From positions 25,544,001-25,608,000 of the forward strand of contig CATNEN010000038.1 in assembly GCA_950097015.1 (NCBI GenBank): a DNA stretch of 64,000 nt. The letters are read 5' to 3'. A program made the translations under genes and the position numbers. Positions 6,001 through 64,000 of the stretch are shown piece after piece (the stretch's first letter is position 1; each line of letters starts with the position of its first letter). The notes under the pieces were generated by a model. It worked only from the letters and a program-made list of their open reading frames with translations. It was not told the origin of the DNA and ran no database searches. This stretch comes from Macrostomum hystrix (Eukaryota; Animalia; Platyhelminthes).

Positions 6001-9000
6001 GGTTTCAAGGACTGCGTACAGTTTGCTCTGTCCATGGACTGCGGAGGCCGCCTCACGAACGCTAATTTCTACCTCAGCTGATGCTCGATACACATTCCAC
6101 AGCTGGGGTGAACTGAAGCAGTTAGCAATTAGGGTGTAATTATTGCTGAAGAACACTATTTGTTTACCTACGGGCTAGATATTGTGACAAAAAAAACAAA
6201 ACATGGCTGTGTTAGTCCAGTGGAATAAAATTGACTCTATTTTAAACAACTACAAGTAGTCTCATGTACTATTATTCTGAATCTTCTCTTCGGCCAGTTC
6301 CTCGCAGTCTTCAATAACTGCGCGCCACGATGGCGTTCGTCTCAATCCTGATCCGTCGCAAACTGAATTTAATCGCTGATAGGCCAATAGCAAAGGCGAG
6401 GAGTGATCTGTGAAAGCGAAATCGATTTTTAAGCTTCATTTTTAGCAACTACATTATCGCAAGTCACTCGGGTAATGAAAATTTTAATAGCGAAAACGTA
6501 GGAATCGATAAGTTCAAAATAATTGAATCAGTTTTACACAAGATTTTGCGATATGATTGTTTAGATCAACAATTAAGCACCATATTATAATTTTTGAATA
6601 TGTAATCTGTATAATCTGTGATTATATTCGTAAAGTGCGCCAAAATTGAAATACTAAGAATTACTAGAATCATCTTCATGCGAGTGCCTAACTTCAGCCA
6701 GTATCTGACTGAGATTTGGCAGAATGCCAAGTGCGGAGAAGCCGGAACTTCGACGACGAGAATGCCTGTAGCTGCTGTCACCCATGCTGTCAGAACTGGG
6801 ACCTGACATAGTGCAATGAGGACAAAACAAATCTATTGAAATATACTCGTACATATATGCAGAAAGTCACGGATTCGAGCTCAAGGACTTAAGTGCGACA
6901 GTCGGGCGCGCTACCGCTCTGCCAATAGGCCTCCAACTTCGTAGTAATTACATGACGAGGCATTCGGTTCAGTTATTACTCCCGACGTTTACATCATACC
7001 TGATGTTTCTAGAGCCACCGAACTCACCAATACTGTGCCTCTCTTCTTCGAAAGATGCCGAAGCTGCTGCTGCTGTAGTCGTGGCGGCAGCTGCGGCAGC
7101 CGCGGCGGCAGCGAAGACGTCCAAGCTGGCGACACCATCTGCAACGTCGAGATCTTCGCCGAGCTCCTCGGAGACGGCGCTGCTCAGGATCACGGATTTT
7201 CTTCGTCGCGAAGCGGCAGCGGCCAAACGGACGACACGCACGCGGGCTGTGTCTCCGCTGTCGCCAGTTGATTCGGTGTCGTCAGCGCTGAAATCGTCGA
7301 AATAGCTCGTCGTCGGAGTTTTCGACGGCGTCGGCGGCGCGGCGGAGCCGAGGCGGCAGCGGCCGCGGCTTCGTCGAGAGGATTCGTTCGCGGCGCTGGC
7401 CCGGGCCTTCGCCAGCAGGTCATCTGGTGGAGGATTAGTTGATGAGTTGACGATCTGAGAAGAAGCTGAGATTCAAACTCCAGACACTTCGTTAAAAGTT
7501 CCAAACCCTTGATCGATTGAGCTTCGCTTTATATTTGACTTGTTGATGAAATAAATATCGACGCAGACGATTTGAAGTTATACAAAGAAAAGTTCAAGAA
7601 AAACTTTAAAAATTTAACGAGGGTATTTTGCTAAACGATAAAAAGTTACATTTTGTCTTGAACCCGCGGTCGATACAGAGAACGATGCAGACGATAAATT
7701 TTATAGAGAGATAGAGAGAGAGACGACCGATAAACAAAAACGCAGGCCGAGTAAAAAATACGATATACTCGTAGTTTCCTAGCTTAAGTACAGCGAGAGA
7801 GTCTATTTCTTTTTTATCTTGAACTGAGCTGAGAGGGTTGGCGTATCTTGAACTGAGCGGAGAGGGTTGGCGTATCTTGAACTGAGCGGAGAGGGGTTGG
7901 CGTATCTTGAACTGAGCGGAGAGGGGTTGGCGTTTCTTGAACTGAGCGGAGAGGGGTTGGCGTTTCTTGAACTGAGCGGAGATGGGTTGGCGTATCTTGA
8001 ACTGAGCGGAGAGGGGTTGGCGTATCTTTAACTGAGCGGAGAGGGGTTGGCGTTTCTTGAACTGAGCGGAGAGGGGTTGGCGTATCTTGAACTGAGCGGA
8101 GAGGGGTTGGCGTATCTTTAACTGAGCTGAGAGGGGTTGGCGTTTCTTGAACTGAGCGGAGAGGGGTTGGCGTTTCTTGAACTGAGCGGAGAGGGGTTGG
8201 CGTTTCTTGAACTGAGCTGAGAGGGTTGGCGTATCTTGAACTGAGCGGAGAGGGGTTGGCGTATCTTGTCTTAGCGGAGAGGGTTGGCGTATCTTGAACT
8301 GAGCGGAGAGGGGTTGGCGTATCTTGTCTTAGCGGAGAGGGGTTGGCGTATCTTGAACTGAGCGGAGAGGGTTGGCGTATCTTGAACTGAGCGGAGAGGG
8401 TTGGCGTATCTTGAACTGAGCTGAGAGGGTTGGCGTATCTTGAACTGAGCTGAGAGGGTTGGCGTATCTTGAACTGAGCGGAGAGGGGTTGGCGTATCTT
8501 GTCTTAGCGGAGAGGGGTTGGCGTATCTTGTCTTAGCGGAGAGGGGTTGGCGTATCTTGAACTGAGCGGAGAGGGTTGGCGTATCTTGAACTGAGCGGAG
8601 AGGGGTTGGCGTTTCTTGAACTGAGCGGAGAGGGGTTGGCGTATCTTGAACTTAGCGGAGAGGGGTTGGCGTATCTTGAACTGAGCGGAGAGGGGTTAGT
8701 AAGACTGGGTTGGGGAGCACGAATGGGGTAAGAGAAAGTGGAAAGAGATCAAAGGTAGGGGTTTAGAACCAGACAGAATTAAAGCGAGGTGAGAACTGAC
8801 AATAAAGAATCGGATTTATTACTAAAAATTTTCCTTCTTTAAATAATCGAGAAAACCATGCCATTTATCGGTGCAAGTCAATCGGTTTTGTTTTCCTAGA
8901 AGCATCTTTAAACTAATAAAGAGCGACGAGCAACGGTAAGATTGACAGAAGAAGTAAGAACCGATTGAGTCAGTTTATTCATTAGTACCTAGTAACAAGC

Positions 9001-19757: not shown

Positions 19758-22700
19758 TCATCTAGTCGCCTTCAGACTGAGAAAATCGTCGCCACCGCCG
19801 AGTATTTGACGATTGGCCGCGTTGTCAGCACTGCCTGGACGTGGGCCTCCGCCTCCGCCACCGCTGCCTCCGCCTCCGCCACTCTGATTGGCCAGAGCGG
19901 CGCTGACTCGGTACGCAGCAAACTGGCGACTCTGCTGCCGCATCGCCAGGCGCTGAAGAGCTTCGTTCAATGCCGCCTCATCGTAGGCCGTCAGCGAGCG
20001 AATATTGCCACCGGAGCCTACCGTCGAGAACGAGGACATGGCAGCGCTGCCGACGCCACCACCGCCACCACCGCCGTTAACGCCAACTCGACTAGCAGAT
20101 GGTCGACTAAGATGGCCGCCTACAGTACGTGGAACCGTGGAACGATGCCGAGAGAGTGAGTAATCAGGAGAGAGTGAGCAATCAGGAGTGGGTGAGCAAT
20201 CAGGAGTGAGTGAGCAATCAGGAGAGAGTGAGCCATCAGGAGAGAGTGAGCAATCAGGAGAGAGTGAGCAATCAGGAGTGAGTGAGCAATCAGGAGAGAG
20301 TGAGCCATCAGGAGAGAGTGAGCAATCAGGAGAGAGTGAGCAATCAGGAGAGAGTGAGCAATCAGGAGAGAGTGAGCAATCAGGTAAGAGTGAGCAATCA
20401 GGAGAGAGTGAGCAATCAGGAGAGAGTGAGCAATCAGGAGAGAGTGAGCAATCAGGAGAGAGTGAGCAATCAGGAGAGAGTGAGCAATCAGGAGAGAGTA
20501 AGCAATCAGGAGAGAGTGAGCAATCAGGAGAGAGTGGGCAATCAGGAGAGAGTGAGCAATCAGGAGAGAGTAAGCAATCAGGAGAGAGTGAGCAATCAGG
20601 AGAGAGTGAGCAATCAGGTAAGAGTAAGCAATCAGGAGAGAGTGAGCAATCAGGAGAGAGTGAGCAATCAGGAGAGAGTGAGCAATCAGGAGAGAGTGAG
20701 CAATCAGGAGTGGGTGAGCAATCAGGAGAGAGTAAGCAATCAGGAGAGAGTGAGCAATCAGGAGAGAGTGAGCAATCAGGAGAGAGTAAGCAATCAGGAG
20801 AGAGTGAGCAATCAGGAGAGAGTAAGCAATCAGGAGAGAGTGAGCAATCAGGAGAGAGTGAGCAATCAGGAGAGAGTGAGCAATCAGGTAAGAGTAAGCA
20901 ATCAGGAGAGAGTGAGCAGTCAGGAGAGAGTAAGCAATCAGGAGAGAGTGAGCAATCAGGAGAGAGTGAGCAATCAGGAGAGAGTGAGCAATCAGGTAAG
21001 AGTAAGCAATCAGGAGAGAGTGAGCAATCAGGAGAGAGTGAGCAATCAGGTAAGAGTAAGCAATCAGGAGAGAGTGAGCAATCAGGAGAGAGTGAGCAAT
21101 CAGGAGAGAGTGAGCAATCAGGAGAGAGTGAGCCATCAGGAGAGAGTGAGCAATCAGGAGTGAGTGAGCAATCAGGAGAGAGTGAGCAATCAGGAGAGAG
21201 TGAGCAATCAGGAGAGAGTGAGCAATCAGGAGAGAGTGAGCAATCAGGAGAGAGTGAGCAATCAGGAGAGAGTGAGCAATCAGGTAAGAGTGAGCAATCA
21301 GGAGAGAGTGAGCAATCAGGAGAGAGTGAGCAATCAGGAGAGAGTGAGCAATCAGGAGAGAGTGAGCAATCAGGAGAGAGTGAGCAATCAGGAGAGAGTG
21401 AGCAATCAGGAGAGAGTGGGCAATCAGGAGAGAGTGAGCAATCAGGAGAGAGTGAGCAATCAGGAGAGAGTGGGCAATCAGGAGAGAGTGAGCAATCAGG
21501 AGAGAGTGAGCAATCAGGAGAGAGTGGGCAATCAGGAGAGAGTGAGCAATCAGGAGAGAGTGAGCAATCAGGAGAGAGTGGGCAATCAGGAGAGAGTGAG
21601 CAATCAGGAGAGAGTGAGCAATCAGGAGAGAGTGAGCAATCAGGAGAGAGTGAGCAATCAGGAGAGAGTGAGCAATCAGGAGAGAGTGAATAAAGCCGAG
21701 TCTCACCTGAAGCGCTGGACGGCCTTTTGAGTCCAGGCGAAGCTGAGTAGACCTGAACAGCTGTGCGAAACGAGCTGCCAATTAAGTCGGAGCCCGATGG
21801 TCCGATTCCGGTTCCGCCACCGCTGTCTCGCCTCTCCCGCGGCGCCCGGTTGTGATTAGAAGAGGCTCCGGAAACTGAACCGGATCCGGATGCAGCCGCG
21901 GTGGCAGCGGCGGCAGCTGCTGGCGAAGCGATGAAAACACCCGCCGACTTGTTCACTCTCGTGTAAGAGGTGAGCAGTGATTCCAGTTGGGCCTCCTCGG
22001 CTAGTCGCAGGAAACTGGTGAACTGCGGCTCAGTCACCCCAGCTGGTCCGTCAGCTGTGAACATAGGTTGCAGTCATATTACATTTTCTGCATGCTGAGC
22101 TACTTTAAGTAGGTAGACAAAAAATCGAAAAAGTGAAATAGATGCTGACAGGCATTGTCTCACCATCCTGCTGCACCCGCATGGCTTCAGTGTCCTTGGC
22201 GTAGGATCGCACAAAGTCTGCCAGCATATTGGCCAATATTCGCTGCCTCTGTCGAAGGCCCAGCCGACGACTCGGGCCGGCAATTTTGGCTCCGGCGGCG
22301 CGACGCAGAAATCGAAGCACCAAATCTAGCTGCTCGTTGGCCAGTCGCTCGGCAGAATCGGCCGCGTTTTCATCGTCCGGCGTTGCCACTGGGGGTGGCA
22401 GTTGATGATCAGCCAGCAGGCGGCGTTGAACCCTCGTCAGATAGGCTGCGAATGCTTGACGAGCCTGAAGATGGTCCAGATCACTCAGAAGATGTCAATC
22501 GTATTACTAATTACGAGCAAGTAGTACATGACGTACGCCAAAATGTACTAAAATAAAAGACACTGAAGCACTGGAAGACACTGAAGCACTGGAAGACACT
22601 GAAGCACTGGAAGACACTGAAGCACTGGAAGACACTGAAGGACTGGAAGACACTGAAGGACTGGAAGACACTGAAGCACTGGAAGACACTGAAGGACTGG

Positions 22701-40100: not shown

Positions 40101-43100
40101 ATTCCCTAGTGGGATTCCCCGGTCTTTTAATTCTCTAGTGGGATTTCTATTTTTTATAATTTAACAAGTTGGATTCTTTTTTTATAAAGTTCTAAAGTAG
40201 AATTCCCCTTTAAAAATACCAAATTCGATTTCTTGAGGGAAAAACTGTAGTGCGTTTAGGCGATTCCCTTGCTATATTTACCGCTTTTAGAATTCTCTAG
40301 TGGGAATTCCAATTTAAGGAGTACGCAGATCCTTCCCTTTAGGAATACCTTTTCGGAATATTCATAGTGTGAATCCCCCAGATAATTCCTTTGCGGGATT
40401 CAGCGTCTACGAAGCTTTTGTCAGTAGGAGATTACTTTTTGAATTTGTTTGCAGCATTTCCCATTAAGGGATTTCTTTTTTTATGGTCCACTTTTTAGGG
40501 AAATTCTCACATGATTCCTCATTTATGAAAATCCTTGACACTAGGTCGATCTGTATTACTCAATGCAAAATCTCCGCTTTCATCCCAAACAGAATCCTCA
40601 TTGTTGACTGGGATGTTCATCACGGCCAGGGTATTCAGCAGGCATTCTACGACAGATCTGACATTCTGTACATCAGCATTCACCGCTACGAGCGGGGCCA
40701 GCACTGGCCTAACCTGCGCGAGGGCGACTACGATTTTGTTGGTATTGGCAACGGCCTTGGTTACAATATAAATGTGCCGCTAAATGAAATTGGCCTATCT
40801 AATACCGATTATTTGGCCATATTTCATAATTTAATAATGCCGATCGCTACTGAGGTGAGTCTTTCAGAGTTTTCCCATTATCGATTTTGGGATTCTCAAA
40901 ATTGTTTAATTTTACTATTATTGATTTCAGGATTCTCCTAATTTTTGGATTTACTGATTATTGATTTTTGGATTATCCTAACTTTTGGATTTTCCCATTA
41001 TCGATTTTGAGATTCTCCTAATTTTGGATTTTCCCATTATCGATTTTGCGATTCTCCTAATTTTGGATTTTCCCATTATCAATTTTGGGATTCTCCTAAT
41101 TTTGGATTTTCCCATTATCGATTTTAGGATTCTCACAATTTTTGGATTTTCCAGTTATCGATTTTGGGATTCTCCCATTTTTTGGATTTTCCCATTATCG
41201 ATTTTAGGATTCTCACAATTTTGGGTTTTTCCATTATCGATTTTGGGATTGTCACATTTTTTGGATTTTCCCATTATCGATTTTGGGATTCTCCCAGTGT
41301 TGGGCATCGTTAACTTTTTTTTAACGGATTAAACATCGATCCGTTAAAGTTAAAATTACAAAAAAGTTAACGTTTTACAACATAAGCCGTTAATTTCAGA
41401 AAAAGTTAACGTTTCAGCGTTAAAAAGCGTTAATTTCAAAGCGTTAAACAATAAAATTAATAAAGGGCACGAGAAACCAACACGGCAGCACATGATTTCC
41501 AAAGTAATTTTCATGAGACACCAGGGCATAGCCGCATTTTCATACATACTACATAGATAGACATAGACATAGGCATATGGAACAAATTATGAAAAGCCCT
41601 ACGTAAGAAAGGCTAAGTTAGGTAGAAGAAAGCCAAAAGCTAATTGGGCAAAAGCGGCGGAAACTACTAAACCACACCACACTACCAGGCAGTGCAGGCA
41701 CTAGTCACAATCACAACCGCACTACCAGTCTACCACTATACTAAGGTATACACTGATAGAACGACTCTAATATTGTAGAGACTTTTAACCAGTCAGCAGA
41801 TTCATTGGAGAACTCGAAACAAATTCAGAGTATATTGCACACCTCATCTATCTCAACTATCTCAATTTGACGTGAATTTTGTGCAAAATTCGTAATTAAC
41901 GGAAGTTAACTGCAGTTAAATCGTCAAAAAAGTAATGGAAAATCATGAATCCGTTAAGAGAAAAAAAATTAACTGAGATCCGTTAAAGTTTAAAAAACGT
42001 TAGCGGACTTTAACGGACTTTAACGGTTAACGGACATTAACGGACTTGTGCCCAACACTGGATTCTCCCACCTTTTGGATTTTTTTAACTTTCCCATTAG
42101 CAATTACGGGATTGTCCCAATAACCTTTTTAAAACTTATATATATTTTTAATAATTTAATCCTTGCGGGGTTTCCTATTTGATTATAATCGTGACATTAT
42201 GACAGTAATATCCCAACGACAATAATGAATTGCAGTTCTCCCCAGATCTGGTGTTTGTCTCAGCTGGCTACGATTGTGCAATCGGCTGTCCATTGGTGAG
42301 GCAGCTATTTATAATCTCCAAAATAATTTAGAATCGATCTCTCATTCCTTTTATTGCGCAATGCGATTAGATTAGCAAATTTCAATTGAATTTGCAGGGC
42401 GAAATGAATGTACACCCGGCTTGCTTCGCTCACTTCACGCACTATCTGATGTCCCTAGCCAATGGACGAGTTGTTGTGGCTCTCGAGGTAAATGGGACAA
42501 CCTTTGGCGTGTTGTTTGTGCTTCAGTCGTTCAAATACAGAAATGTAACACAGCTCTAAACACACTGATTTCACATACAGGGCGGCTATTGTCTATCTTC
42601 CCTAAGCGAAGGCGTTGCCATGACAATTCGAACGTTGCTAGGCGATGCACCGCCACGCCTAGAAACCATTGGTGAACCAGCTGATAGTGTCAAGGAGACT
42701 CTGTTGAACTGCATCATGGCTCTGAGACCCTATTGGAAATGCCTGCGAATGCAGGGCTCAACTGGCAATGTACTCATACCGGATATATCCCATTTGAGTC
42801 TGAACTCAACGTGAGTATTGCTTTCAGGCTGAATCTCAGATCCCTATTCTAAAACCCCAGATCCCCATTCAATAACTTTCAGATCCTTATCTAAACTTCC
42901 AAACGCATTACTGAAACTCACAGATCCCCATTCTAAAACTCCCAGATCCCCATTCTAGATCTTCAGATTCCCAGATCTAAAACTGTCCAACCCCCTGACA
43001 CCGCAGACACGAGGTGAAGCTGATCTATCCCTGGGTTGAGTATACTCCCAGTCTGTCGCCTGAGAAGCAGGCCTGGGCCGATGCCGAAGTGAAACGTCTA

Positions 43101-46100: not shown

Positions 46101-49100
46101 GTTTGTTAATCCCATTCTAGATTATCTCTGACAGATTTAGAGTTTGTTAATCCCATTCTAGATTATCTCTGACAGATTAGGAGTTTGTTAATCCCATTCT
46201 AGATTATCTCTGACAGATTTAGAGTTTGTTAATCCCATTCTAGATTATCTCTGACATATTAGGAGTTGGCTAATCCCATTCTAGATTATCTCTGACAGAT
46301 TTAGAGTTTGTTCATCCCATTCTAGATTATCTCTGACAGATTAGGAGTTTGTTAATCCCATTCTAGATTATCTCTGACAGATTAGGAGTTGGCTAATCCC
46401 ATTCTAGATTATCTCTGACAGATTTAGAGTTTGTTCATCCCATTCTACATTATCTCTGACAGATTAGGAGTTTGTTCATCCCATTCTAGATTATCTCTGA
46501 CAGATTTGGAGTTTGTTAATCCCATTCTAGATTATCTCTGACAGATTAGGAGTTTGTTAATCCCATTCTAGATTATCTCTGACAGATTAGGAGTTTGTTA
46601 ATCCCATTCTAGATTATCTCTGACAGATTAGGAGTTTGTTAATCCCATTCTAGATTATCTCTGACAGATTAGGAGTTTGTTAATCCCATTCTAGATTATC
46701 TCTGACAGATTTAGAGTTTGTTAATCCCATTCTAGATTATCTCTGACAGATTTGGAGTTTGTTAATCCCATTCTAGATTATCTCTGACAGATTAGGAGTT
46801 TGTTAATCCCATTCTAGATTATCTCTGACAGATTTGGAGTTTGTTAATCCCATTGTAGATTATCGTTGACAGATTAGGAGTTTGTTCATCACATTCTAGA
46901 TTATCTCTGACAGATTATGAGTTTGTTCATCCCATTCTAGATTATCTCTGACAGATTTGGAGTTTGTTCATCCCATTCTAGATTATCTCTGACAGATTTG
47001 AGTTTGGTAATCCCATTCTAGATTATCTCTGACAGATTAGGAGTTTGTTCATCCCATTCTAGATTATCTCTGACAGATTAGGAGTTTGTTCATCCCATTC
47101 TAGATTATCTCTGACAGATTTGGAGTTTGTTAATCCCATTCTAGATTATCTCTGACAGATTTGAGTTTGGTAATCCCATTCTAGATTATCTCTGACAGAT
47201 TAGGAGTTTGTTCATCCCATTCTAGATTATCTCTGACAGATTAGGAGTTTGTTCATCCCATTCTAGATTATCTCTGACAGATTTGGAGTTTGTTAATCCC
47301 ATTCTAGATTATCTCTGACAGATTAGGAGTTTGTTAATCCCATTCTAGATTATCTCTGACAGATTAGGAGTTTGTTAATCCCATTCTAGATTATCTCTGA
47401 CAGATTTAGAGTTTGTTCATCCCATTCTAGATTATCTCTGACAGATTTAGAGTTTGTTAATCCCATTCTAGATTATCTCTGACAGATTAGGAGTTTGTTA
47501 ATCCCATTCTAGATTATCTCTGACAGATTTAGAGTTTGTTAATCCCATTCTAGATTATCTCTGACAGATTAGGAGTTTGTTAATCCCATTCTAGATTATC
47601 TCTGACATATTAGGAGTTGGCTAATCCCATTCTAGATTATCTCTGACAGATTTGGAGGTAATCCCATTCTAGATTATCTCTGACAGATTTGGAGTTAATC
47701 CCATTGTAGATTATCGTTGACAGATTTGGAGTCAAGATATTAGGATTATCTGTATTTGATTTTAGTGAATCTGCTTACCAGCATCATTTATAATAAATTG
47801 CCAAATTTCGCTACCTCAGGGTCGCGTTGGTGATGCAGAGTATCTGGCTGCCTTTCACAACATCGTCCTGCCAGTCGGGCATTCGTTCGACCCAGATCTA
47901 GTCCTTGTATCAGCCGGCTTCGATGCTGCCCTTGGGGATCCTCTCGGCGGATTGAAGGTCACTCCAGCCTGCTACGGTCACCTGACTCACCTGTTAGGCG
48001 GTCTGGCCGGCGGTCGGGTTGTTCTAGCCTTGGAGGGCGGCTACAATTTGACGTCCATTGGCGAGGCGTCTTGTCACTGCGTTGCTTCTCTGCTGGGCCG
48101 ACCAAATCTGCAGCTGCAGCCGGGACTGGCGCCTAACGACCAGTGAGTTTAGACACTGTTTCAGGCTGAATTCAGACACTGTTTCAGGCTGTATTCAGAC
48201 ACTGTTTCAGGCTGTATTCAAGCACTGTTTCAGGCTGTATTCAGACACTGTTTCAGGCTGTATTCAGACACTGTTTCAGGTTGTATTCAGACACTGTTTC
48301 AGGCTGTATTCAAACACTGTTTCAGGCTGTATTCAGACACTGTTTCAGGCTGAATTCAGACACTGTTTCAGGCTGAATTCAGACACTGTTTCAGGCTGTA
48401 TTCAGACACTGTTTCAGGCTGTATTTAGACACTGTTTCAGGCTGTATTCAGACACTGTTTCAGGCTAAATTTAGACACTGTTTCAGGCTGTATTCAGACA
48501 CTGTTTCAGGCTAAATTTAGACACTGGTTTAGACTGTAGTTTAGGATGTATAAATAAACATTTCATTGCAGTGGCGTCAAGACCATTAGAGAAGTGATTG
48601 ATATTCACAAGGCTTACTGGCCACAGTTGAAATTCTCTGGTAAGATGCCTGTAAAATTTTGTAGACATATCGAGACTAAATGGACTTGTGGACTAACCTG
48701 CTTTTTGCTTTGTTTTAGGCGACATTCCTAACTGGGTGGCCACCTCGCCACAGGAGCCCGAGCTGTAAGTAGATTTTTGTTTCCTTGGTCAGCTTATCCG
48801 CGCACCAAATCCCATCATTTGCCATCCTGAGATCCCATCTTCCCAATCCCTTCAGCTCCCATCCTGAGATCTCATCTTCCCAATCCCTTCAGCTCCCATC
48901 CTGAGATCCCATCTTCCCAATCCCTTAAGCTCCCATCCTGAGATCCCATCTTCCCAGTGACTCCCAGCCGCGTCATAACACACTCCTGGCCTGTTGCAGG
49001 ACTAGTGATGGCGCTGCCTCGGTTGACAAGCTCGCCAAGGACCTCCTCAATCTTGGTTTGGTGTCTGGTGCTTCGACCTCGGCCAGCAATGTGGAAGCCT

Positions 49101-49483
49101 CAGTCGGCGCAGCTACAGGAGGCTTCAGTCCCAGCCAGCAGCAGCCGCAGTTTTTCGCAGTCCATCCTCGCACCGACTGTCCGCACGTGATCCAACCCGA
49201 TAGCGTCACTCGCATCGCAGACGGCCGCGGCATTGACGCCGGCGCAGCCTGTCAGAGTTGCTCGGACTGTAGCGAGAACTGGATCTGTCTGGCCTGCTTG
49301 GAGACACACTGCGGTCGCTACGTGTCTGGCCACATGCTGTGCCACAGCAAGACTAGCGGTCACCCGATAGCTCTGTCTTTTAGCGACCTGTCAGTGTGGT
49401 GCTATCACTGCGACTCCTACATTATTTCGTCTGCGCTGGAACCAGCTCTGGCCGCTGCTGCCAATTCCAAATTTGGCGAGTGA
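37142..49483 (+). CDS. HDAC6: Histone deacetylase 6 (two deacetylase domains plus ZnF-UBP)
   Basis: Exons: 37142-37144 (ATG only, tentative), 37238-37269, 37353-37494, 38894-39031, 39402-39607, 40593-40854, 42236-42295, 42398-42487, 42581-42810, 43007-43436, 44609-45007, 47820-48142, 48572-48639, 48719-48764, 49000-49483. Two sets of RPPGHHA / GFC / DWDVHHG / SAG(Y/F)D / LEGGY motifs, and a C-terminal CPH..Cxx[19 protein letters not shown]...[10 protein letters not shown] zinc finger. Confidence 0.95.
37575..38760. repeat. 20-bp minisatellite (ACTCAAATGCCTCTCTAACA/T)n in an HDAC6 intron
   Basis: Direct tandem array. Confidence 0.97.
39140..39265 (+). mobile_element. tRNA-like SINE head, family B (CORE-like)
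   Basis: A box TAGCCTAGTGG and B box GGTTCGATTCT, followed by TTGCTTCAGTTCA, which resembles the minus strand of 56450-56600. No acceptor stem or anticodon arm consistent with a true tRNA. Confidence 0.55.
39845..40145. repeat. Degenerate repeat of about 30 bp (GGAATTCCCTAGTGGGATTCCCCGTCTTT)
   Basis: Tandem array with an internal quasi-palindrome. Confidence 0.85.
40865..41294. repeat. 39-bp minisatellite (TTTTGGATTTTCCCATTATCGATTTTGGGATTCTCCTAA)n, interrupted by a MITE
   Basis: Tandem array. The repeat resumes at 42061-42120 after the insertion. Confidence 0.9.
41295..42060. mobile_element. Non-autonomous hAT-type DNA transposon (MITE), 766 bp
   Basis: 12-bp TIRs CAGTGTTGGGCA...TGCCCAACACTG. 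Perfect 8-bp TSD GATTCTCC at 41287-41294 and 42061-42068. Multiple subterminal CCGTTAA/TTAACGG motifs. No transposase ORF. Confidence 0.92.
43457..44518. repeat. 21-bp minisatellite (CATAGCAACTGACTAAACCTA)n in an HDAC6 intron
   Basis: Direct tandem array. Confidence 0.97.
45107..47735. repeat. 41-bp minisatellite (GATTAGGAGTTTGTTAATCCCATTCTAGATTATCTCTGACA)n, about 64 copies, in an HDAC6 intron
   Basis: Direct tandem array. Confidence 0.97.
48147..48535. repeat. 23-bp minisatellite (TTCAGACACTGTTTCAGGCTGTA)n, copy 1
   Basis: Direct tandem array with the same unit as 51126-51742. Confidence 0.96.
48822..48956. repeat. 37-bp tandem repeat (CCCATCCTGAGATCCCATCTTCCCAATCCCTTCAGCT), about 3.5 copies
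   Basis: Direct tandem array in the last HDAC6 intron. Confidence 0.88.
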
Positions 49484-51981: not shown

Positions 51982-51996
51982 TTTATTTTTTTTATT
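51982..51996 (-). terminator. Candidate polyadenylation signals (AATAAA twice) for the neuropeptide precursor gene
   Basis: TTTATT at 51982-51987 and 51991-51996 on the plus strand, about 150 nt downstream of the TAA at 52143. Confidence 0.45.
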
Positions 51997-52142: not shown

Positions 52143-53405
52143 TTACTCTCCATTGACGAGTAGTTCCTTGTCTAGGTCATGGGTAACCAATCTCTTGTTC
52201 CTGAAGGCTCCGGACAGCCATCTCTTGTTCCTGAAGGCTCCGGACAGCCATCTCTTGTTCCTGAAGGCTCCGGACAGCCATCTCTTGTTCCTGAAGGATC
52301 CGGACAGCCATCTCTTGTTCCTGAAGACTCCGGACAGCCATCTCTTGTTCCTGAAGGCTCCGGACAGCCATCTCTTGTTCCTGAAGGCTCCGGACAGCCA
52401 TCTCTTGTTCCTGAAGGCTCCGAACAGCCATCTCTTGTTCCTGAAGGCTCCGGACAGCCATCTCTTGTTCCTGAAGGATCCGGACAGCCATCTCTTGTTC
52501 CTGAAGGCTCCGGACAGCCATCTCTTGTTCCTGAAGGCTCCGGACAGCCATCTCTTGTTCCTGAAGGCTCCGGACAGCCATATCTTGTTCCTGAAGGCTC
52601 CGGACAGCCATCTCTTGTTCCTGAAGGCTCCGGACAGCCATCTCTTGTTCCTGAAGGCTCCGGACAGCCATCTTTTGTTCCTGAAGGCTCCAGACAGCCA
52701 TCTCTTGTTCCTGAAGGCTCCGGACAGCCATCTCTTGTTCCTGAAGGCTCCGGACAACCATCTCTTATTCCTGAAGGCTCCGGACAACCATCTCTTATTC
52801 CTGAAGGCTCCGGACAACCATCTCTTATTCCTGAAGGCTCCGGACAGCCATCTCTTGTTCCTGAAGGCTTCGGACAGCCATCTCTTATTCCTGAAGGCTC
52901 CGGACAGCCATCTCTTGTTCCTGAAGGCTCCGGACAGCCATCTCTTGTTCCTGAAGGCTCCGGACAGCCATCTCTTGTTCCTGAAGGCTTCGGACAGCCA
53001 TCTCTTGTTCCTGAAGGCTCCGGACAACCATCTCTTGTTCCTGAAGGCTCCGGACAGCCATCTTTTGTACATAGTTTCGTCGGGTAGCAAATTATTGAAC
53101 TCGTTGGACATCATGTCTTTGCCATCTTCCTACAATTGCAAGTCACCTTTATCTTAAAAAACTACCAGCTCTCAATACCAGACAGAGTATAGTTTGTTCT
53201 CTGTGGCATGGAGATCACTCACCTTGTCGTCATCAACAGATTCCGCGTATAAGTTTGTCACTAGAACTGAAAGAGATAGTTTTTCGCGAGTAATTCAAAT
53301 TTCTAAGAAACAAAAAATCAAGTAGTCTCTTGTTGGATGGATGCAGAGGGGTTGTAGTAACAATAACTTACCGCTAGCAACAATAAGCCACACGACGGCC
53401 CGCAT
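52143..53405 (-). CDS. Putative multi-copy neuropeptide precursor, about 354 aa: signal peptide plus 29 WLSGAFRN-type peptides separated by KR
   Basis: Exons 53372-53405 (AAAAATG...AGC G|gtaag), 53223-53266 (tttcag|...AAG|gtgag) and 52143-53129 (ttgtag|GAA) join in frame: MRAVVWLIVASVLVTNLYA-ESVDDDKEDGKDMMSNEFNNLLPDETMY-KR-(WLSGAFRN-KR)x29-LVTHDLDKELLVNGE*. Several repeat variants are synonymous in this frame. Confidence 0.82.
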
Positions 53406-53476
53406 TTTTCGAATGTTCTACAATTCAGAGGTCCTTCAGAATCTGTGAGAGTGGCTGGGACACTTCCGTGTCCCAC

Positions 53477-53482
53477 TTTATA
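53477..53482 (-). promoter_or_regulatory. TATA box of the neuropeptide precursor gene
   Basis: TATAAA on the minus strand, about 70 nt upstream of the ATG at 53405. Confidence 0.6.
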
Positions 53483-54109
53483 TGCCATTTGGCGTTCTCA
53501 CGGTCAGCCAGCAACTATAGAGCTCCTCAGTGTTAGCCGCCTTTTTTCATTCGACCAATCCAAAATCGATTGGCAGATCTAGCTCATTGGACAATTTTGC
53601 ATTGTAGAACATATGGCAACATCCCGATGGCTCATCATGGCTTATAGTGTAGTGTGTTCTGTCAGAGTGATTCTGCAAATACAAAAACTGCAGTTGTCCA
53701 TTTCCAACCACCTGTTTGTTCCGGCAATTTGCTGCATCAGCAAAATTGGCTCTAATATACTCGTATTTGCTGTTGACCATATTATGGTGCCAAAAATAAT
53801 AAGCGCCACAGTTTTTAAGCCTTTCTGCAATGTTCTATTTTAAAAAAATGTCGCTACTCAAGATTCAAAGTCGATGACTTGATGAGAAGATGAGCAAGAT
53901 GAGCTTCAAGAGCACTTTCGCAAAACCATTTCGGCCCTTGCTACTTTCTGATTAAGCAACCCCAGCTAATGTAGTTATTTCATCGGCCTAAACCTTCAAT
54001 GATTAGATAAATTTCGAAAAGTTGACACTGTAGCTGATCCATGCGAAAATTCTGTGAAGTTACATCGGGCGCTTATGGCACGATACATGCCTTTAAAAGC
54101 TCAATCATC

Positions 54110-54620
54110 TGAAACTGTCTGACAGTAAAATGTTGTTCCTGAAACTGTCTGACGGTAAAATGTTGTTCCTGAAACTGTCTGACAGTAAAATGTTGTTCCT
54201 GAAGCTGTCTGACAGTGAAATGTTGTTCCTGAAACTCTCTAACAGTAAAATGTTGTTCCTGAAACTTTCTGACAGTGAAATGTTGTTCCTGAAACTGTCT
54301 GACAGTAAAATGTTGTTCCTGAAACTGTCTGACAGAAAACTGTTGTTCCTGAAACTGTCTGACAGTGAAATGTTGTTCCTGAAACTGTCTTACAGCGAAA
54401 TGTTGTTCCTGAAACTGGCTGACAGCGAAATGTTGTTCCTGAAAATGGCTGACAGTAAAATGTTGTTCCTGAAAATGGCTGACTGTAAATTGTTGTTCTT
54501 GAAACTGTCTGGCAGTAAAATGTTGTTCCTAAAACTGTGTGACAGTGGAAAGTTGTCACTGAACCGGCGGACAGTGAAATGTTGTTCTTGTTACTATCTG
54601 ACAGTTGAATGTTGTCACTG
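54110..54620. repeat. 30-bp minisatellite (AATGTTGTTCCTGAAACTGTCTGACAGTAA)n, about 17 copies, related to the neuropeptide repeat
   Basis: Direct tandem array with 19/30 ungapped identity to the coding unit at 52190-53065. Confidence 0.93.
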
Positions 54621-56029
54621 AATCAGTTACTCTTGAATTCGTCCATGTATTTTATACTTCAAGAAGACGTTTTTTTGCTTTCAAAAATATTTTTTAGACT
54701 CTCATTTACGAGAAAATTGAAAAATAGTGAAAAAGATATATTAATTTAACTTCAGTCCACCTTAATTCACTCGGATATTTTTACTGATTGGTCAGTCGTG
54801 CATTTATCTATCTATGGTAGGCACTATCGTATCGAAACTTAGCTTGAAGTAAAAGCTTTAGTCGCATGTACTTAAAATTTATTTTTTCTTACTTTCTTGT
54901 GTTTCAATTTAAATAGAAGCGAATATATGACTTTGGTTTTATCCCTGTGGATTAATGGACAGAGATTGGCTATAGAAAGAAATGACAATTTAGCCTAGCT
55001 GGGCAACCTGTACAGTCCAGTGGCTACAAAAGGCTGCGTACAGCTGTTCAGTCTGTGGACTGCAGGGGGTCCATATCTACCCCAGCAGATGCTGGGATAC
55101 AGAAACTATAGCTTCGGAGGCTCTAGTCATTGTCTATAAGTCGTAAAAATTCGCTAAGGACTCAATTTAAATTAAAAATGTGAGTTATAAAACTTATTCA
55201 GCCTGTCATATTGGCACTTATATTGTTTGAACATCTTTGGCTTTTTGTGTCTGGACAAAGCTTTTAAAATGTCAGGTCTGATAAGTTTTGAGTTTTAATG
55301 ATAATGTGCTGCTTGATTGCTGGACATTCGACAAGACAATGCGCTTGTCGGAAACGCTCTCTGGCCATTGTTTAGAGATAAAACATTCTAAAGATTTTTT
55401 ATTTCATTTTTTGCGACCAAGATAATGCATCAAAGTACAGTTGTGTTTTAATTTGCCAATTGTCACAGTACCTGCGTCACTATGAGTAGTCAGTTAGAAT
55501 ATCGAACATAAAATAAGAAAAAAAATTATTAACTTAAATTACTCTGCACGTGTATGCAATTTTGAGTTCGTTGCAATGTCCTTAAAAATAACACTACCAT
55601 ATAAAAAATACGATTTTTATGTAATCCCCAATGACTGTCTCGTTAAAAGTACTCTTGCAGAACGGAATCCCGATTCAATTAATCAAATTCAAAAGGTATT
55701 TGCCGTGTGACATTCAGGCTATGCAAATGGGAACTTATCAAGGATGCAATGCGAAACCTCACGCAAAAGTACTCATTGAGTGAAGAAATCGTCAAATTGA
55801 TTCAGAAACTGATTCGATAAAATTATTGGCTTCTAAAGCTTTTAATAATTAAATTCAGTTAAGCTAGATGACAGCCGACGTATCTAACAACGAGTTGTTT
55901 GATCATGTTTTATACCAACTATGTACGTACGGAACGAAAAATGATGCGATAAAAATAGGAGATAATTAATAAAAACAACACAAAAGCAATGTACGCTGTA
56001 CAATGTACGTCCTGACGACAACATACTCC

Positions 56030-62864: not shown

Positions 62865-64000
62865 TCAGATGTACATCATCAGCTTGAGAAAGTTGTCCTG
62901 CTTCATAGCCTCCTTGGTCTTGATCATGGCTTCGTAGGTTGTAAAGGCGGTCCTCATTCGCACCGCCAGCAGGATGAAGTCCTCGAAGCACACGCTGCCC
63001 TTTACAGGGTCGGTATAGCGCATAGCAACCGTTTCAAACACCTTGTTGCAGAGATTGTATCCGGCTGCCTTCAGGGCGTCGCGCAGCTCAAAGGAGTCAA
63101 AAGAACCGTTGCAGTCTGCGTCCTTCTCTTTGAAAATGGTCTTCAGGAGGCGGATCTGGTTCCACAGCATCTTAAATTCGTCAAACTCCATGTAGCCAGA
63201 CATGTTCAGATCCATAAGGGCGAGCATGCTGCGACAGGCTTCAGCGCTGAAGCCGGTGAAATCTTTCACCTCGCGACCGAACGACCGGTTGAGAATCTGC
63301 TGCAGCTGGAAGGCGTGAATGCGACCTGCCCCGCCAGAGAAACCATGAAAAGCCTGGCGCAGAGGCTCCTCGTTCTCCGCGGTGCTGACAGGCGCTGTGA
63401 TTGCCGACCTCACCTCCTCCATCTTGTTCTCCGTGTCCAGCACGCTAGACAGGTTGGGCTTCTCTGAGAAGATGCGCAGTATGAACCTAGCCTCTTCATT
63501 CGGATTGAACGTCGATGGTATGATCGCGTAGTGTCCCGGGGGCAGTTTGTGCCGACCGCTGACTTCTCTCTGGTTGACGAAAGCAGACTTGTCTGTCTGA
63601 CGATTGTAACGGAAGAATTTCTGATCCAATGGACCGTCACTCTGCTCCCGTAGCTGATAAATGGCGTAACCAATAGTAAAGTACTCGCCACCGACTGTTA
63701 GTTTTCGCACATCCTTCTGCATCAGGCCGACAATTATAGTGCCAAGGTTCTCGTCGTCCGAATCGTCTGGGTCAACAATCTCTACGCGGAACTGCTGGTT
63801 CGTGTGAAAGCTGTCGATAAAGTTTCTGCAGCCGCCGGCGCTCACGTTTCGCTTCCACTCGCCCTTCTCCAGGCACATTTCCCAACGGCGTTTCTTGGCA
63901 GCTGCGCCAGTTAAGCTGCTGGACATGGACTCTGGACTGAGATGGCAGATCTCTAGCTTAGTGAACTCTTGCACAAAGTCCATGTAGGCCATCCAGAACT
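62865..64000 (-). CDS. Classical calpain large subunit, 3' part (end of protease core, C2-like domain III and penta-EF domain); 5' end lies outside the window
   Basis: FWMAYMDF..LEICHL, GEWKRNVSAGGCRN, NQQFRV, IIVGLMQK, FVNQREVSGRHKLPPGHYAIIPSTFNPNEEARFILRIFSE, ACRSMLALMD and ELRDALKAAG. Continuous ORF to TGA at 62865. Confidence 0.93.
   Translation of the reverse strand, partial: FWMAYMDFVQEFTKLEICHLSPESMSSSLTGAAAKKRRWEMCLEKGEWKRNVSAGGCRNFIDSFHTNQQFRVEIVDPDDSDDENLGTIIVGLMQKDVRKLTVGGEYFTIGYAIYQLREQSDGPLDQKFFRYNRQTDKSAFVNQREVSGRHKLPPGHYAIIPSTFNPNEEARFILRIFSEKPNLSSVLDTENKMEEVRSAITAPVSTAENEEPLRQAFHGFSGGAGRIHAFQLQQILNRSFGREVKDFTGFSAEACRSMLALMDLNMSGYMEFDEFKMLWNQIRLLKTIFKEKDADCNGSFDSFELRDALKAAGYNLCNKVFETVAMRYTDPVKGSVCFEDFILLAVRMRTAFTTYEAMIKTKEAMKQDNFLKLMMYI

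What the first reader, a model, noticed from the sequence alone, without database searches (positions are those of the whole stretch)
52143..53482. Hidden neuropeptide prohormone encoding 29 copies of an unrecognised WLSGAFRN-type peptide
Seen: the apparent 30-bp minisatellite is in frame with two small upstream exons that have canonical splice sites. They encode a hydrophobic signal peptide (MRAVVWLIVASVLVTNLYA) and an acidic spacer, and a TATA box and AATAAA signals bracket the gene. The repeat gives 29 octapeptides flanked by KR: 23 WLSGAFRN, 2 WLSEAFRN, 2 WLSGSFRN, 1 WLFGAFRN and 1 WLSGVFRN. One site is KI instead of KR, which would give a fused double peptide. Recurrent unit variants (AAC/AAT, CTG/TTG, AAG/AAA, TCC/TCT) are synonymous in this frame. 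Established: signal peptide plus dibasic-flanked repeats is the standard prohormone-convertase substrate layout, and no Gly before KR means no amidation. Inference: a secreted peptide signal of a family I do not recognise, which repeat masking and the ORF track (no signal peptide) would miss.
Basis: partly seen in the sequence, partly recalled or inferred. Interest (0 to 1): 0.92.

Follow-up and report, generated by a model that had tools for sequence, protein, structure and literature searches.

The report
Flatworm gene for 29 secreted octapeptides
What looks like one more 30-base satellite in this Macrostomum flatworm genome is the main exon of a real, spliced gene for a secreted protein built to be cut into 29 copies of the peptide WLSGAFRN; this is probably an undescribed signalling peptide found only in this genus, but its cleavage and its cell type are not yet shown.

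Summary
A 30-bp x 29 array (52191-53060, minus strand) reads 29 octapeptides: 23 WLSGAFRN and 6 variants. There are 28 KR sites and one KI.

They join exon 1 (MRAVVWLIVAS) and exon 2 (V-LVTNLYAESVDDDK) to the repeat exon and run on into the array. So the three-exon, 354-codon gene is real and transcribed.

The genome matches the published Macrostomum hystrix assembly. It holds four more arrays of the same type (WLGDGFRS, WLGDGIRS, WLSDGIRS, flanked by KK or KR). M. lignano has uncharacterised UniProt relatives (WLSDGFRN, W[IL]GDGFRS). Across the five arrays, variants are 20 synonymous to 11 non-synonymous in the peptide frame only (p about 4e-6). A neighbouring sister array has lost W, the basic pairs and the open frame.

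Convertase and 7B2 genes are present. No paper holds these peptide strings.

Best reading: a lineage-specific multi-copy propeptide, probably a neuropeptide or hormone. Cleavage, cell type and receptor are untested.

The scan found a similar but unrelated 30-bp-encoded octapeptide gene elsewhere in this genome (s1-366052).

The parts
53477..53482 (-). TATAAA box, about 40 nt upstream of the furthest point reached by RNA contigs
   Evidence: Read directly. The X2 contig reaches 53438. Function as a promoter is inferred.
53372..53438 (-). Exon 1: 5'UTR (at least 53406-53438, no upstream ATG) and the first 34 nt of CDS (ATG at 53403-53405). It encodes MRAVVWLIVAS plus the first base of a split Val codon.
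   Evidence: Translation. Contigs of X1 and X2 cover 53372-53428/53438 and join 53372 to 53266.
53267..53371 (-). Intron 1, 105 nt, GTAAGT...CAG, phase 1
   Evidence: Skipped in one contig each of X1 and X2, ends CT..AC on the + strand. No contig depth inside it.
53223..53266 (-). Exon 2, 44 nt. It encodes the rest of the signal peptide and the start of the acidic spacer: (V)LVTNLYA/ESVDDDK.
   Evidence: Translation. Covered by both runs with 0 mismatches.
53130..53222 (-). Intron 2, 93 nt, GTGAGT...TAG, phase 0
   Evidence: Skipped in one contig each of X1 and X2 ('skips 93', CT..AC with the cut +1).
53061..53129 (-). Start of exon 3: acidic spacer EDGKDMMSNEFNNLLPDETMY followed by the first KR
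   Evidence: Translation. Covered by contigs contiguous with the exon 2 junction.
52191..53060 (-). 29 in-frame units of 30 bp, each W-L-S-G-A-F-R-N-K-R. There are 28 KR sites. The KI site of unit 16 is at 52581-52586.
   Evidence: TRF. Unit-by-unit listing. The first units are covered by RNA contigs, and collapsed repeat words are about ten times deeper than the unique exons in X2.
52143..52190 (-). C-terminal tail LVTHDLDKELLVNGE and TAA stop (52143-52145)
   Evidence: Translation.
51982..51996 (-). Two overlapping-region AATAAA signals about 150 nt after the stop (presumed poly(A) signals)
   Evidence: Read. Not tested with reads.
54109..54622 (-). Sister 30-bp array about 0.65 kb upstream of the TATA box, on the same strand. 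Its units read [LS]LSDSFRNNI and match the coding unit at 20 of 30 bases. It has no W, no basic pair and one in-frame TAA. It is a decayed or non-coding relative and not part of the transcript.
   Evidence: TRF. Matched by the M. lignano protein P0074 at 59-62%. Unit listing and unrelated flanks. 3 of 14 variant types are synonymous.

Best explanation
A three-exon gene on the minus strand (about 53450 to 51975) of Macrostomum hystrix encodes a 354-residue secreted precursor.

**Proposed mechanism.**
1. Two micro-exons supply a split signal peptide (MRAVVWLIVAS-V-LVTNLYA).
2. An acidic spacer follows.
3. The large exon, which is a 30-bp minisatellite at the DNA level, supplies 29 octapeptides, each followed by Lys-Arg.
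4. In the regulated secretory pathway, a subtilisin-like proprotein convertase cuts after each KR.
5. A carboxypeptidase trims the two basic residues.
6. This releases about 27 free, non-amidated octapeptides (WLSGAFRN and five single-residue variants) and one fused 18-mer (the KI site).
7. These peptides act outside the cell as a signalling peptide, most likely a neuropeptide or peptide hormone.

The gene is one of a Macrostomum-restricted family of precursors with the peptide motif W-[LI]-[SG]-[GD]-[AG]-[FI]-R-[NS] flanked by K-[KR].

**Shown:** the transcript, the splice pattern, the reading frame, the family, and selection on the peptide frame at family level.

**Inferred:** signal-peptide cleavage, convertase cleavage, trimming, secretion, the signalling role and the neuronal source.
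For: **Transcript and gene model.**
- Both introns are removed exactly as predicted, with GT..AG on the minus strand, in contigs of two runs from two studies.
- There is no coverage of the introns or of upstream DNA, so these are cDNA-type data.
- The contigs run from exon 2 into the array.

**Precursor layout.**
- Exon 1 has a hydrophobic core (mean Kyte-Doolittle 2.95 over 8 residues) after M-R.
- An acidic spacer then leads to KR.
- There is A at -3 and no upstream ATG.
- All 29 units are in frame with 0% indels. 28 of 29 sites are KR.

**Family within the genome.** Four further arrays in the same genome keep W, L, R and the basic pair while other positions and codons differ, for example Arg AGA against CGT and AGG against CGG.

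**Selection.**
- Pooled within-array variant types are 20 synonymous to 11 non-synonymous in the peptide frame. 25% synonymous is expected; binomial p = 3.7e-6.
- The other two frames give 4/31 and 7/31.
- Control arrays of the window give 0-40% in most frames.

**Conservation in M. lignano.**
- It has KK-WLSDGFRN and KK-W[IL]GDGFRS repeat proteins (UniProt A0A1I8FXQ2 'Secreted protein', A0A1I8FF56, A0A1I8IJ38).
- In one of them the peptide is identical to the M. hystrix C7 locus, while the spacer has diverged.

**Contrast with the sister array.** It has lost W, the basic pair and the open frame.

**Processing machinery.** P-domain convertase genes lie at six or more loci, and there is a 7B2 gene.

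**No stable fold.** pLDDT 55, pTM 0.17.
Against: - No peptide has been detected, and no cell type is known.
- The own array alone shows no significant synonymous excess (4 of 9 types).
- The peptides have no amidation, pyroglutamate or disulfide. Many, though not all, neuropeptides carry one of these.
- The intact protein would be extremely basic and repetitive (three basic residues per ten), so an uncleaved structural role is possible.
- The 5' exons and signal peptides of the four paralogues could not be resolved.
- No formal signal-peptide or cleavage predictor was run.
- RNA coverage through the whole array and the 3' end was not tested.
- In this genome many 30-bp arrays resemble each other by chance.
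Confidence: 0.6

Rival explanations
1. Same gene and same dibasic processing, but the peptides are a product of non-neuronal gland cells (epidermal, pharyngeal, prostate or other). They would be released to the outside or into a partner as a pheromone, allohormone, defence or mucus-associated peptide, not as a neuropeptide.
For: - The architecture alone cannot tell neurons from glands.
- The family is restricted to one genus and is diversifying, as is common for reproductive and external secretions.
- In the small run X2 (50 million letters) the unique exons have word depth 33, against 2.1 in X1 (206 million letters). This hints at very high and variable expression, more typical of gland products. 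The tool warns that depth is a poor measure.
- The peptides have no protective end modification.
Against: Nothing positive points to any gland. Multi-copy precursors of short peptides flanked by KR are the classic neuropeptide layout, and 7B2 and convertase genes are present.
Confidence: 0.22
2. The protein is secreted but not cleaved. It would be an intact, very basic, aromatic-containing repeat protein (WLSGAFRNKR x 29) that works as a material, such as an adhesive, coacervate, rhabdite, eggshell or sperm-associated component.
For: - There are three basic residues plus W and F in every ten, reminiscent of cation-pi materials. This rests on my own knowledge, not on a test.
- Paralogues use KK, a weaker convertase site.
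- A neighbouring locus just beyond the window was noted by the scan as another repetitive secreted polyprotein (s1-854585, unchecked).
Against: - The basic pair is the most strictly kept feature across paralogues, with synonymous or conservative codon turnover.
- The first copy is preceded by its own basic pair after an acidic spacer, and a non-repeat tail follows the last pair. That is the layout of a cleaved precursor.
- No fold is predicted.
Confidence: 0.13
3. A non-coding minisatellite that happens to be transcribed. Under this reading the open frame, the KR periodicity and the upstream 'signal peptide' are chance in a genome packed with 30-bp arrays.
For: - The window has about 35 minisatellites.
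- Four of the six frames of this array are open.
- Many unrelated 10-residue-period arrays match it by chance.
- The own array alone has no significant synonymous excess.
Against: - Precise GT..AG splicing joins an ATG-initiated hydrophobic exon in frame to the array, in two studies.
- The synonymous excess is specific to the peptide frame across five arrays.
- The peptide is conserved, with a diverged spacer, in M. lignano.
- The sister array shows what decay looks like.
Confidence: 0.04

Closest known systems
Multi-copy neuropeptide prohormones (e.g. molluscan FMRFamide, cnidarian RFamide/LWamide precursors, planarian npp/spp genes of Collins et al. 2010, PMC2953531)
   Same: A signal peptide, an acidic spacer, many near-identical short peptides each bounded by a basic pair, and a short non-repeat tail. 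A high copy number is encoded by a tandem DNA repeat. Convertase and 7B2 genes are present in the genome.
   Different: There is no Gly before the basic pair, hence no C-terminal amide. The peptide motif W-L-[SG]-x-x-[FI]-R-[NS] occurs in none of the flatworm peptide lists I could search. Processing and neuronal expression are not shown.
Orcokinin / pedal-peptide type precursors (non-amidated, many copies, KR-flanked; nematode NLP-14/15; planarian ppp-1/2)
   Same: They are non-amidated, multi-copy, flanked by basic pairs, and have a Gly-x-Gly-Phe-like core (WLGDGFRS in the paralogues). The comparison comes from my memory of those families; it is a lead, not a test.
   Different: Those peptides have 12-20 residues, with an N-terminal x-F-D-x-I and a C-terminal G-F-x-F signature. 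These have 8 residues, start with W-L and end in R-[NS]. No statistical similarity could be tested on so short a unit.
Macrostomum lignano predicted proteins A0A1I8FXQ2 ('Secreted protein'), A0A1I8FF56 and A0A1I8IJ38 (UniProt, uncharacterised)
   Same: They are true relatives, with KK-WLSDGFRN and KK-W[IL]GDGFRS arrays after an acidic spacer ending in a basic pair. They were the only true relatives among the best 150 of 1.84 billion representative proteins.
   Different: They come from another species and are automatic gene models (two are fused to unrelated read-through sequence). The basic pair is KK rather than KR, and the peptide differs at two positions. No function is assigned.
15 x MLRDPMLD precursor of the same genome (scan note s1-366052)
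   Same: According to that note, it is another 30-bp minisatellite that is the main exon of a spliced gene for KR-flanked octapeptides in M. hystrix.
   Different: The peptide sequence is unrelated. I did not examine that locus.

Membership tests
Convertase-processed multi-copy propeptide (prohormone/neuropeptide precursor) | N-terminal signal peptide | tested here: met
   Exon 1 and exon 2 read M-R, then a 12-residue hydrophobic core, then TNLYA/ES. Mean hydropathy is 2.95 over 8 residues. No formal predictor (SignalP) was available, and the joined protein was not built.
Convertase-processed multi-copy propeptide (prohormone/neuropeptide precursor) | Each peptide copy bounded by basic pairs (KR/KK/RR) | tested here: met
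   KR precedes the first copy and follows 28 of 29 copies, with one KI. The paralogues use KK or KR.
Convertase-processed multi-copy propeptide (prohormone/neuropeptide precursor) | Expressed as an mRNA that joins the signal peptide to the repeats in frame | tested here: met
   Both junctions are present in contigs of two runs from two studies, and the contigs are contiguous into the array.
Convertase-processed multi-copy propeptide (prohormone/neuropeptide precursor) | Selection on the peptide sequence and the cleavage sites rather than on the spacers | tested here: met
   20 synonymous to 11 non-synonymous variant types in the peptide frame over five arrays, p = 3.7e-6, with no excess in the other frames. 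The peptide WLGDGFRS is identical in M. hystrix and M. lignano while the spacer differs. The own array alone is not significant.
Convertase-processed multi-copy propeptide (prohormone/neuropeptide precursor) | Processing machinery in the organism | tested here: met
   PF01483 P-domain matches above cut-off at six or more loci. Secretogranin V/7B2 scores 71.7 bits.
Convertase-processed multi-copy propeptide (prohormone/neuropeptide precursor) | Mature peptides detectable; expression in neurons or endocrine cells; a receptor | not testable with these tools
   This needs peptidomics, in situ hybridisation or single-cell data, and GPCR assays.
RFamide/FMRFamide-like peptides | C-terminal Arg-Phe followed by Gly as amide donor | tested here: not met
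   The units end F-R-N-K-R. There is no Gly before the basic pair, and the order is F-R, not R-F.
Orcokinin / pedal peptide family | 12-20 residue peptides with conserved N-terminal F-D-x-I and C-terminal G-F-x-F motifs (from my knowledge of the family) | tested here: not met
   The peptides have 8 residues and carry neither motif.
Described flatworm NPP/SPP families | Peptide motif listed in the published flatworm peptide sets | tested here: inconclusive
   No hit for the peptide strings in 8.4 million full texts, in Collins 2010 text and supplements, or in PMC9495596. The main comparative paper on flatworm NPP families is not in the searchable library, and sequences often sit in unsearched supplements.
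Non-coding minisatellite | No frame-specific constraint, not part of a spliced coding transcript | tested here: not met
   It is spliced in frame to a signal-peptide exon, and there is frame-specific constraint at family level.

The most novel reading that the evidence does not exclude
In Macrostomum, 30-bp minisatellites act as a birth-and-death source of signalling-peptide genes. The W-L-x-x-x-[FI]-R-x family would be a genus-specific neuropeptide system with its own receptors. It comprises five coding arrays and several decayed ones, including the sister array 1 kb away. Unrelated octapeptide arrays such as MLRDPMLD x 15 would have arisen the same way. That would make this genome a place where the origin and turnover of new neuropeptides from satellite DNA can be followed step by step.
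Probability: 0.25. Interest if true: 0.7.

Novelty: new member of a known kind. Interest (0 to 1): 0.5.

Why it matters
**For flatworm signalling.** Free-living Macrostomum species are models for regeneration, stem cells and sexual conflict, yet their peptide signalling is barely charted. This gene adds a highly repeated peptide, restricted to the genus, that can be tested directly by peptidomics, in situ hybridisation, RNAi and receptor pairing.

**For genome annotation.** In this very satellite-rich genome, repeat masking can hide real genes whose main exon is itself a minisatellite. The decayed sister array and the dispersed paralogues give a small natural series for studying how multi-copy peptide precursors expand, diverge and die.

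Tried and rejected
**Searches that came back blank or could not be run.**
- The search for homologous proteins with the whole repeat exon and with its first 70 residues found nothing. The known M. lignano relatives lie outside the tool's length window, so these blanks mean little.
I could not see the genomic context of the M. lignano relatives.
- Paper searches for the peptide strings found nothing. Macrostomum neuropeptide literature gave only background.

**Matches rejected as spurious or uninformative.**
- The Pfam hit to 'BTK motif' on the repeat exon has no passing stretch and is a repeat artefact.
- Most of the 101 own-genome matches and 147 of the 150 listed library matches are unrelated proteins or arrays with a 10-residue period. 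I rejected them as relatives.
- BLAST of the gene's 5' and 3' flanks against the paralogue loci and against the sister array's flanks found no similarity.

**Unresolved.**
- I tried to find the signal-peptide exons of the paralogues by ATG, donor and phase scanning. Only the C7 locus shows an in-frame hydrophobic stretch (ILFFLVALSGTIALS) before its spacer, and its start codon is unclear.
- AlphaFold on the repeat exon gave no confident fold, so no fold search was made.
- The bacterial promoter/terminator scan is irrelevant to this eukaryote.

- The spliced protein was never joined for a search. Exons were handled apart by reference, so SignalP- or NeuroPred-type analysis of the joined 354-residue protein was left out.
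- The long repeat was not sent to read laying, because that tool states it turns long repeats away.
Full report
**1. The observation**

The 30-bp array is real. TRF gives 52190-53068, 29.3 copies, 96% matches and no indels.

On the minus strand, 52143-53129 translates without a stop. It reads EDGKDMMSNEFNNLLPDETMY, then KR, then 29 units of eight residues each followed by a basic pair, then LVTHDLDKELLVNGE and TAA.

There are 28 KR sites and one KI (unit 16, ATA at 52581-52583).

Features upstream and downstream, all read unless noted:
- Exon 1 (ATG at 53403-53405, to 53372) reads MRAVVWLIVAS and ends one base into a codon, before GTAAGT.
- Exon 2 (53266-53223) completes that codon as Val and reads LVTNLYAESVDDDK before GTGAGT.
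- Exon 3 starts at 53129, after TAG.
- The CDS adds up to 354 codons.
- TATAAA lies at 53477-53482. There is no ATG between it and the start codon, and an A stands at -3.
- Two AATAAA signals lie about 150 nt after the stop.

**2. Is it more than chance?**

Caution is needed. The window holds about 35 separate minisatellites, and four of the six frames of this very array are open. An open frame therefore means nothing here.

The decisive test was RNA. The run search returned only two runs, from two studies, each holding a small share of the words. The reads tool states that it turns long repeats away, so I laid them on 53010-53700 only.

What the contigs show:
- In each run one contig skips 53267-53371 (105 nt) and 53130-53222 (93 nt, cut +1). 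The ends are CT..AC on the + strand, that is GT..AG on the minus strand.
- The X2 contig covers 53074-53128, 53222-53266 and 53372-53438 with no mismatch.
- The X1 contig runs on to 53010, inside the array.
- There is no depth in either intron or upstream of 53438. These are therefore cDNA-type data, although neither run is on record as RNA.
- Collapsed repeat words are about ten times deeper than the unique exons in X2, as expected if the array is in the transcript.

Contigs can miss rare isoforms. Coverage of the middle and end of the array, and the 3' end, remains untested.

**3. The organism**

- The window is contig 38 of a genome of 220,453,370 bases in 42 contigs.
- The published Macrostomum hystrix assembly is described as about 220 Mb in 42 contigs (PMC10468722). 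Another scan note names the same species (s1-846790).
- A calpain fragment at the window's end finds flatworm calpains first, at 44-47% identity.
- The neighbouring genes are ordinary. An HDAC6-like gene lies on the + strand (deacetylase and zf-UBP exons at 40483-40938 and 49058-49480), and a calpain lies on the minus strand (62868-63992).
- The peptide gene sits between them, convergent with HDAC6.

**4. The family**

Searching the whole genome with the repeat exon gave 101 matches. Most are unrelated arrays with a 10-residue period.

Four are clear relatives:

| Locus | Position | Unit | Copies |
|---|---|---|---|
| C25 | 0.99 Mb | KR-WLGDGIRS | 27, natural stop after the last degenerate unit |
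| C7 | 1.09 Mb | KK-WLGDGFRS | 22, preceded by an AG acceptor and the acidic spacer EGSGDITGFDDDLMTKR |
| C38 | 25.09 Mb, 0.5 Mb from our gene | KK-WLSDGIRS | 19, spacer LASEVDDLL...HRR |
| C1 | 8.27 Mb | KK-WLGDGFRS | 17, no clear spacer, possibly a dead copy |

W, L, R and the basic pair are invariant between loci while the codons turn over: Leu CTG/CTC, Arg AGG/CGG, the second basic residue AGA/CGT/AAG.

A scan of 1.84 billion representative proteins gave many repeat-against-repeat matches. Only three of the best 150 carry the motif. All three are Macrostomum lignano UniProt entries:
- A0A1I8FXQ2, named 'Secreted protein' (KK-WLSDGFRN);
- A0A1I8FF56 (the same peptide);
- A0A1I8IJ38 (MALSGTLVFSEKLESSSHEVSGYDDDERLTKK followed by 11 x W[IL]GDGFRS-KK).

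The last one matches the C7 locus of M. hystrix, which reads (V)ALSGTIALSETV / EGSGDITGFDDDLMTKR / WLGDGFRS. The peptide is identical and the spacer is roughly half conserved. So the family is shared by two Macrostomum species and was seen nowhere else.

**5. Selection**

Identity between units proves nothing, because arrays homogenise. I therefore classed the distinct within-array variants of the five arrays, leaving out degenerate end units.

| Frame | Synonymous | Non-synonymous | Expected synonymous | Binomial p |
|---|---|---|---|---|
| Peptide frame | 20 | 11 | 25% | 3.7e-6 |
| +1 | 4 | 27 | about 25-28% | no excess |
| +2 | 7 | 24 | about 25-28% | no excess |

Seven other arrays of the window serve as controls. 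They give 0-40% in most frames, with higher values only where few variant types exist. The sister array gives 3 of 14.

For the finding's own array alone the count is 4 of 9, which is not significant.

**6. The sister array**

The sister array at 54109-54622 lies on the same strand and shares 20 of 30 bases per unit (CTGTC and TTCAGGAACAA blocks). It reads [LS]LSDSFRNNI, with no Trp, no basic pair, one in-frame TAA and unrelated flanks.

It lies upstream of the TATA box and is not part of the transcript. It shows what such an array looks like without coding constraint. This agrees with scan note s1-854401.

**7. Mechanism**

The layout is that of a precursor processed in the regulated secretory pathway (established knowledge of subtilisin-like proprotein convertases and carboxypeptidase E-type trimming). 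It has a signal peptide, an acidic spacer, short identical peptides each bounded by a basic pair, and a non-repeat tail.

- The genome has P-domain convertase genes at six or more loci and a 7B2 gene.
- There is no Gly before KR, so the products would be free-acid octapeptides. The KI unit would give one 18-residue double peptide.
- AlphaFold predicts no stable fold for the repeat exon (pLDDT 55, pTM 0.17).

I therefore hold that the gene gives about 27 free octapeptides and one fused 18-mer that act as an extracellular signal, most likely a neuropeptide or hormone (0.6).

The rivals are:
- the same processing in a non-neuronal gland (0.22);
- an uncleaved, very basic material protein (0.13);
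- a transcribed non-coding satellite (0.04).

Cleavage, secretion, cell type and receptor are all inferred.

**8. Comparison with what is known**

It works like classic multi-copy neuropeptide precursors. It is not an RFamide: there is no Gly and the order is F-R-N. It does not meet the orcokinin/pedal-peptide signature as I know it.

The peptide strings occur in none of these sources:
- the 8.4 million searchable full texts;
- Collins et al. 2010 and its supplements;
- a schistosome peptide survey.

The main comparative paper on flatworm NPP families is not in the library, so that comparison stays open.

The closest relatives are the three uncharacterised M. lignano entries. The scan has also reported an unrelated octapeptide precursor (15 x MLRDPMLD) encoded by another 30-bp array in this genome (s1-366052, not checked by me). 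This suggests that satellite-encoded peptide genes recur in this species.

**9. Limits and omissions**

- The joined spliced protein was not built or searched. Exons were handled apart, by reference.
- The 5' exons of the paralogues are unresolved.

**10. Verdict**

It is a new, genus-restricted member of a well-known kind of gene. It is of moderate interest to flatworm neurobiology and to genome annotation, and the 'neuro' part is still to be shown.

Noticed in passing
window 1-64000: The minisatellite density is extraordinary: about 35 separate arrays with periods of 10-42 bp and up to 186 copies. Many lie inside the introns of the HDAC6-like gene (40-49.5 kb). Several have periods divisible by three and open frames.
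   Followed up: partly
window 53456-53475: A perfect 8-bp inverted repeat with a 4-nt loop (TGGGACAC TTCC GTGTCCCA) lies between the TATA box and the furthest 5' point of the RNA contigs. It could be a palindromic transcription-factor site at the promoter of the peptide gene.
   Followed up: no
window 7815-8697: A second 30-bp array has almost the same copy number (29.9). Its unit is TATCTTGAACTGAGCGGAGAGGGGTTGGCG. By eye no frame shows basic pairs. I did not check it for splicing or expression.
   Followed up: no
window 19758-22064 (minus): A 768-residue ATG-started open frame runs through an 18-bp x 85 array (20150-21689). It could be a hexapeptide-repeat protein or just an open satellite frame.
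   Followed up: no
L003 (G000:C7:1089975-1093637), L002 (C25:989718-993554), L005 (C38:25086980-25090564), L008 (C1:8271253-8274750): These are four paralogous arrays (WLGDGFRS, WLGDGIRS, WLSDGIRS with KK or KR). Three have an acceptor site and an acidic spacer. Their signal-peptide exons are unresolved. The C1 copy runs into another repeat and may be dead.
   Followed up: partly
L031 (G000:C33:828300-833600), L004 (C34:3105744-3109469): These are degenerate relatives of the same 30-bp unit (GLSDGFKGRN / GLSDGLEFRD; WMGEAFEEQR). They lack basic pairs and carry stops, and look like decayed copies of the peptide array family.
   Followed up: partly
about 1.8 kb beyond the window's end (scan note s1-854585): Another first-stage note reports a hidden secreted Ser/Tyr-rich polyprotein with KKR sites next to this window. 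I did not examine it.
   Followed up: no
runs X1 and X2: The two runs that hold the spliced form carry different organism labels (A and B) and differ about 16-fold in contig depth, despite X2 being four times smaller. The gene may be very strongly expressed in some samples or stages.
   Followed up: no
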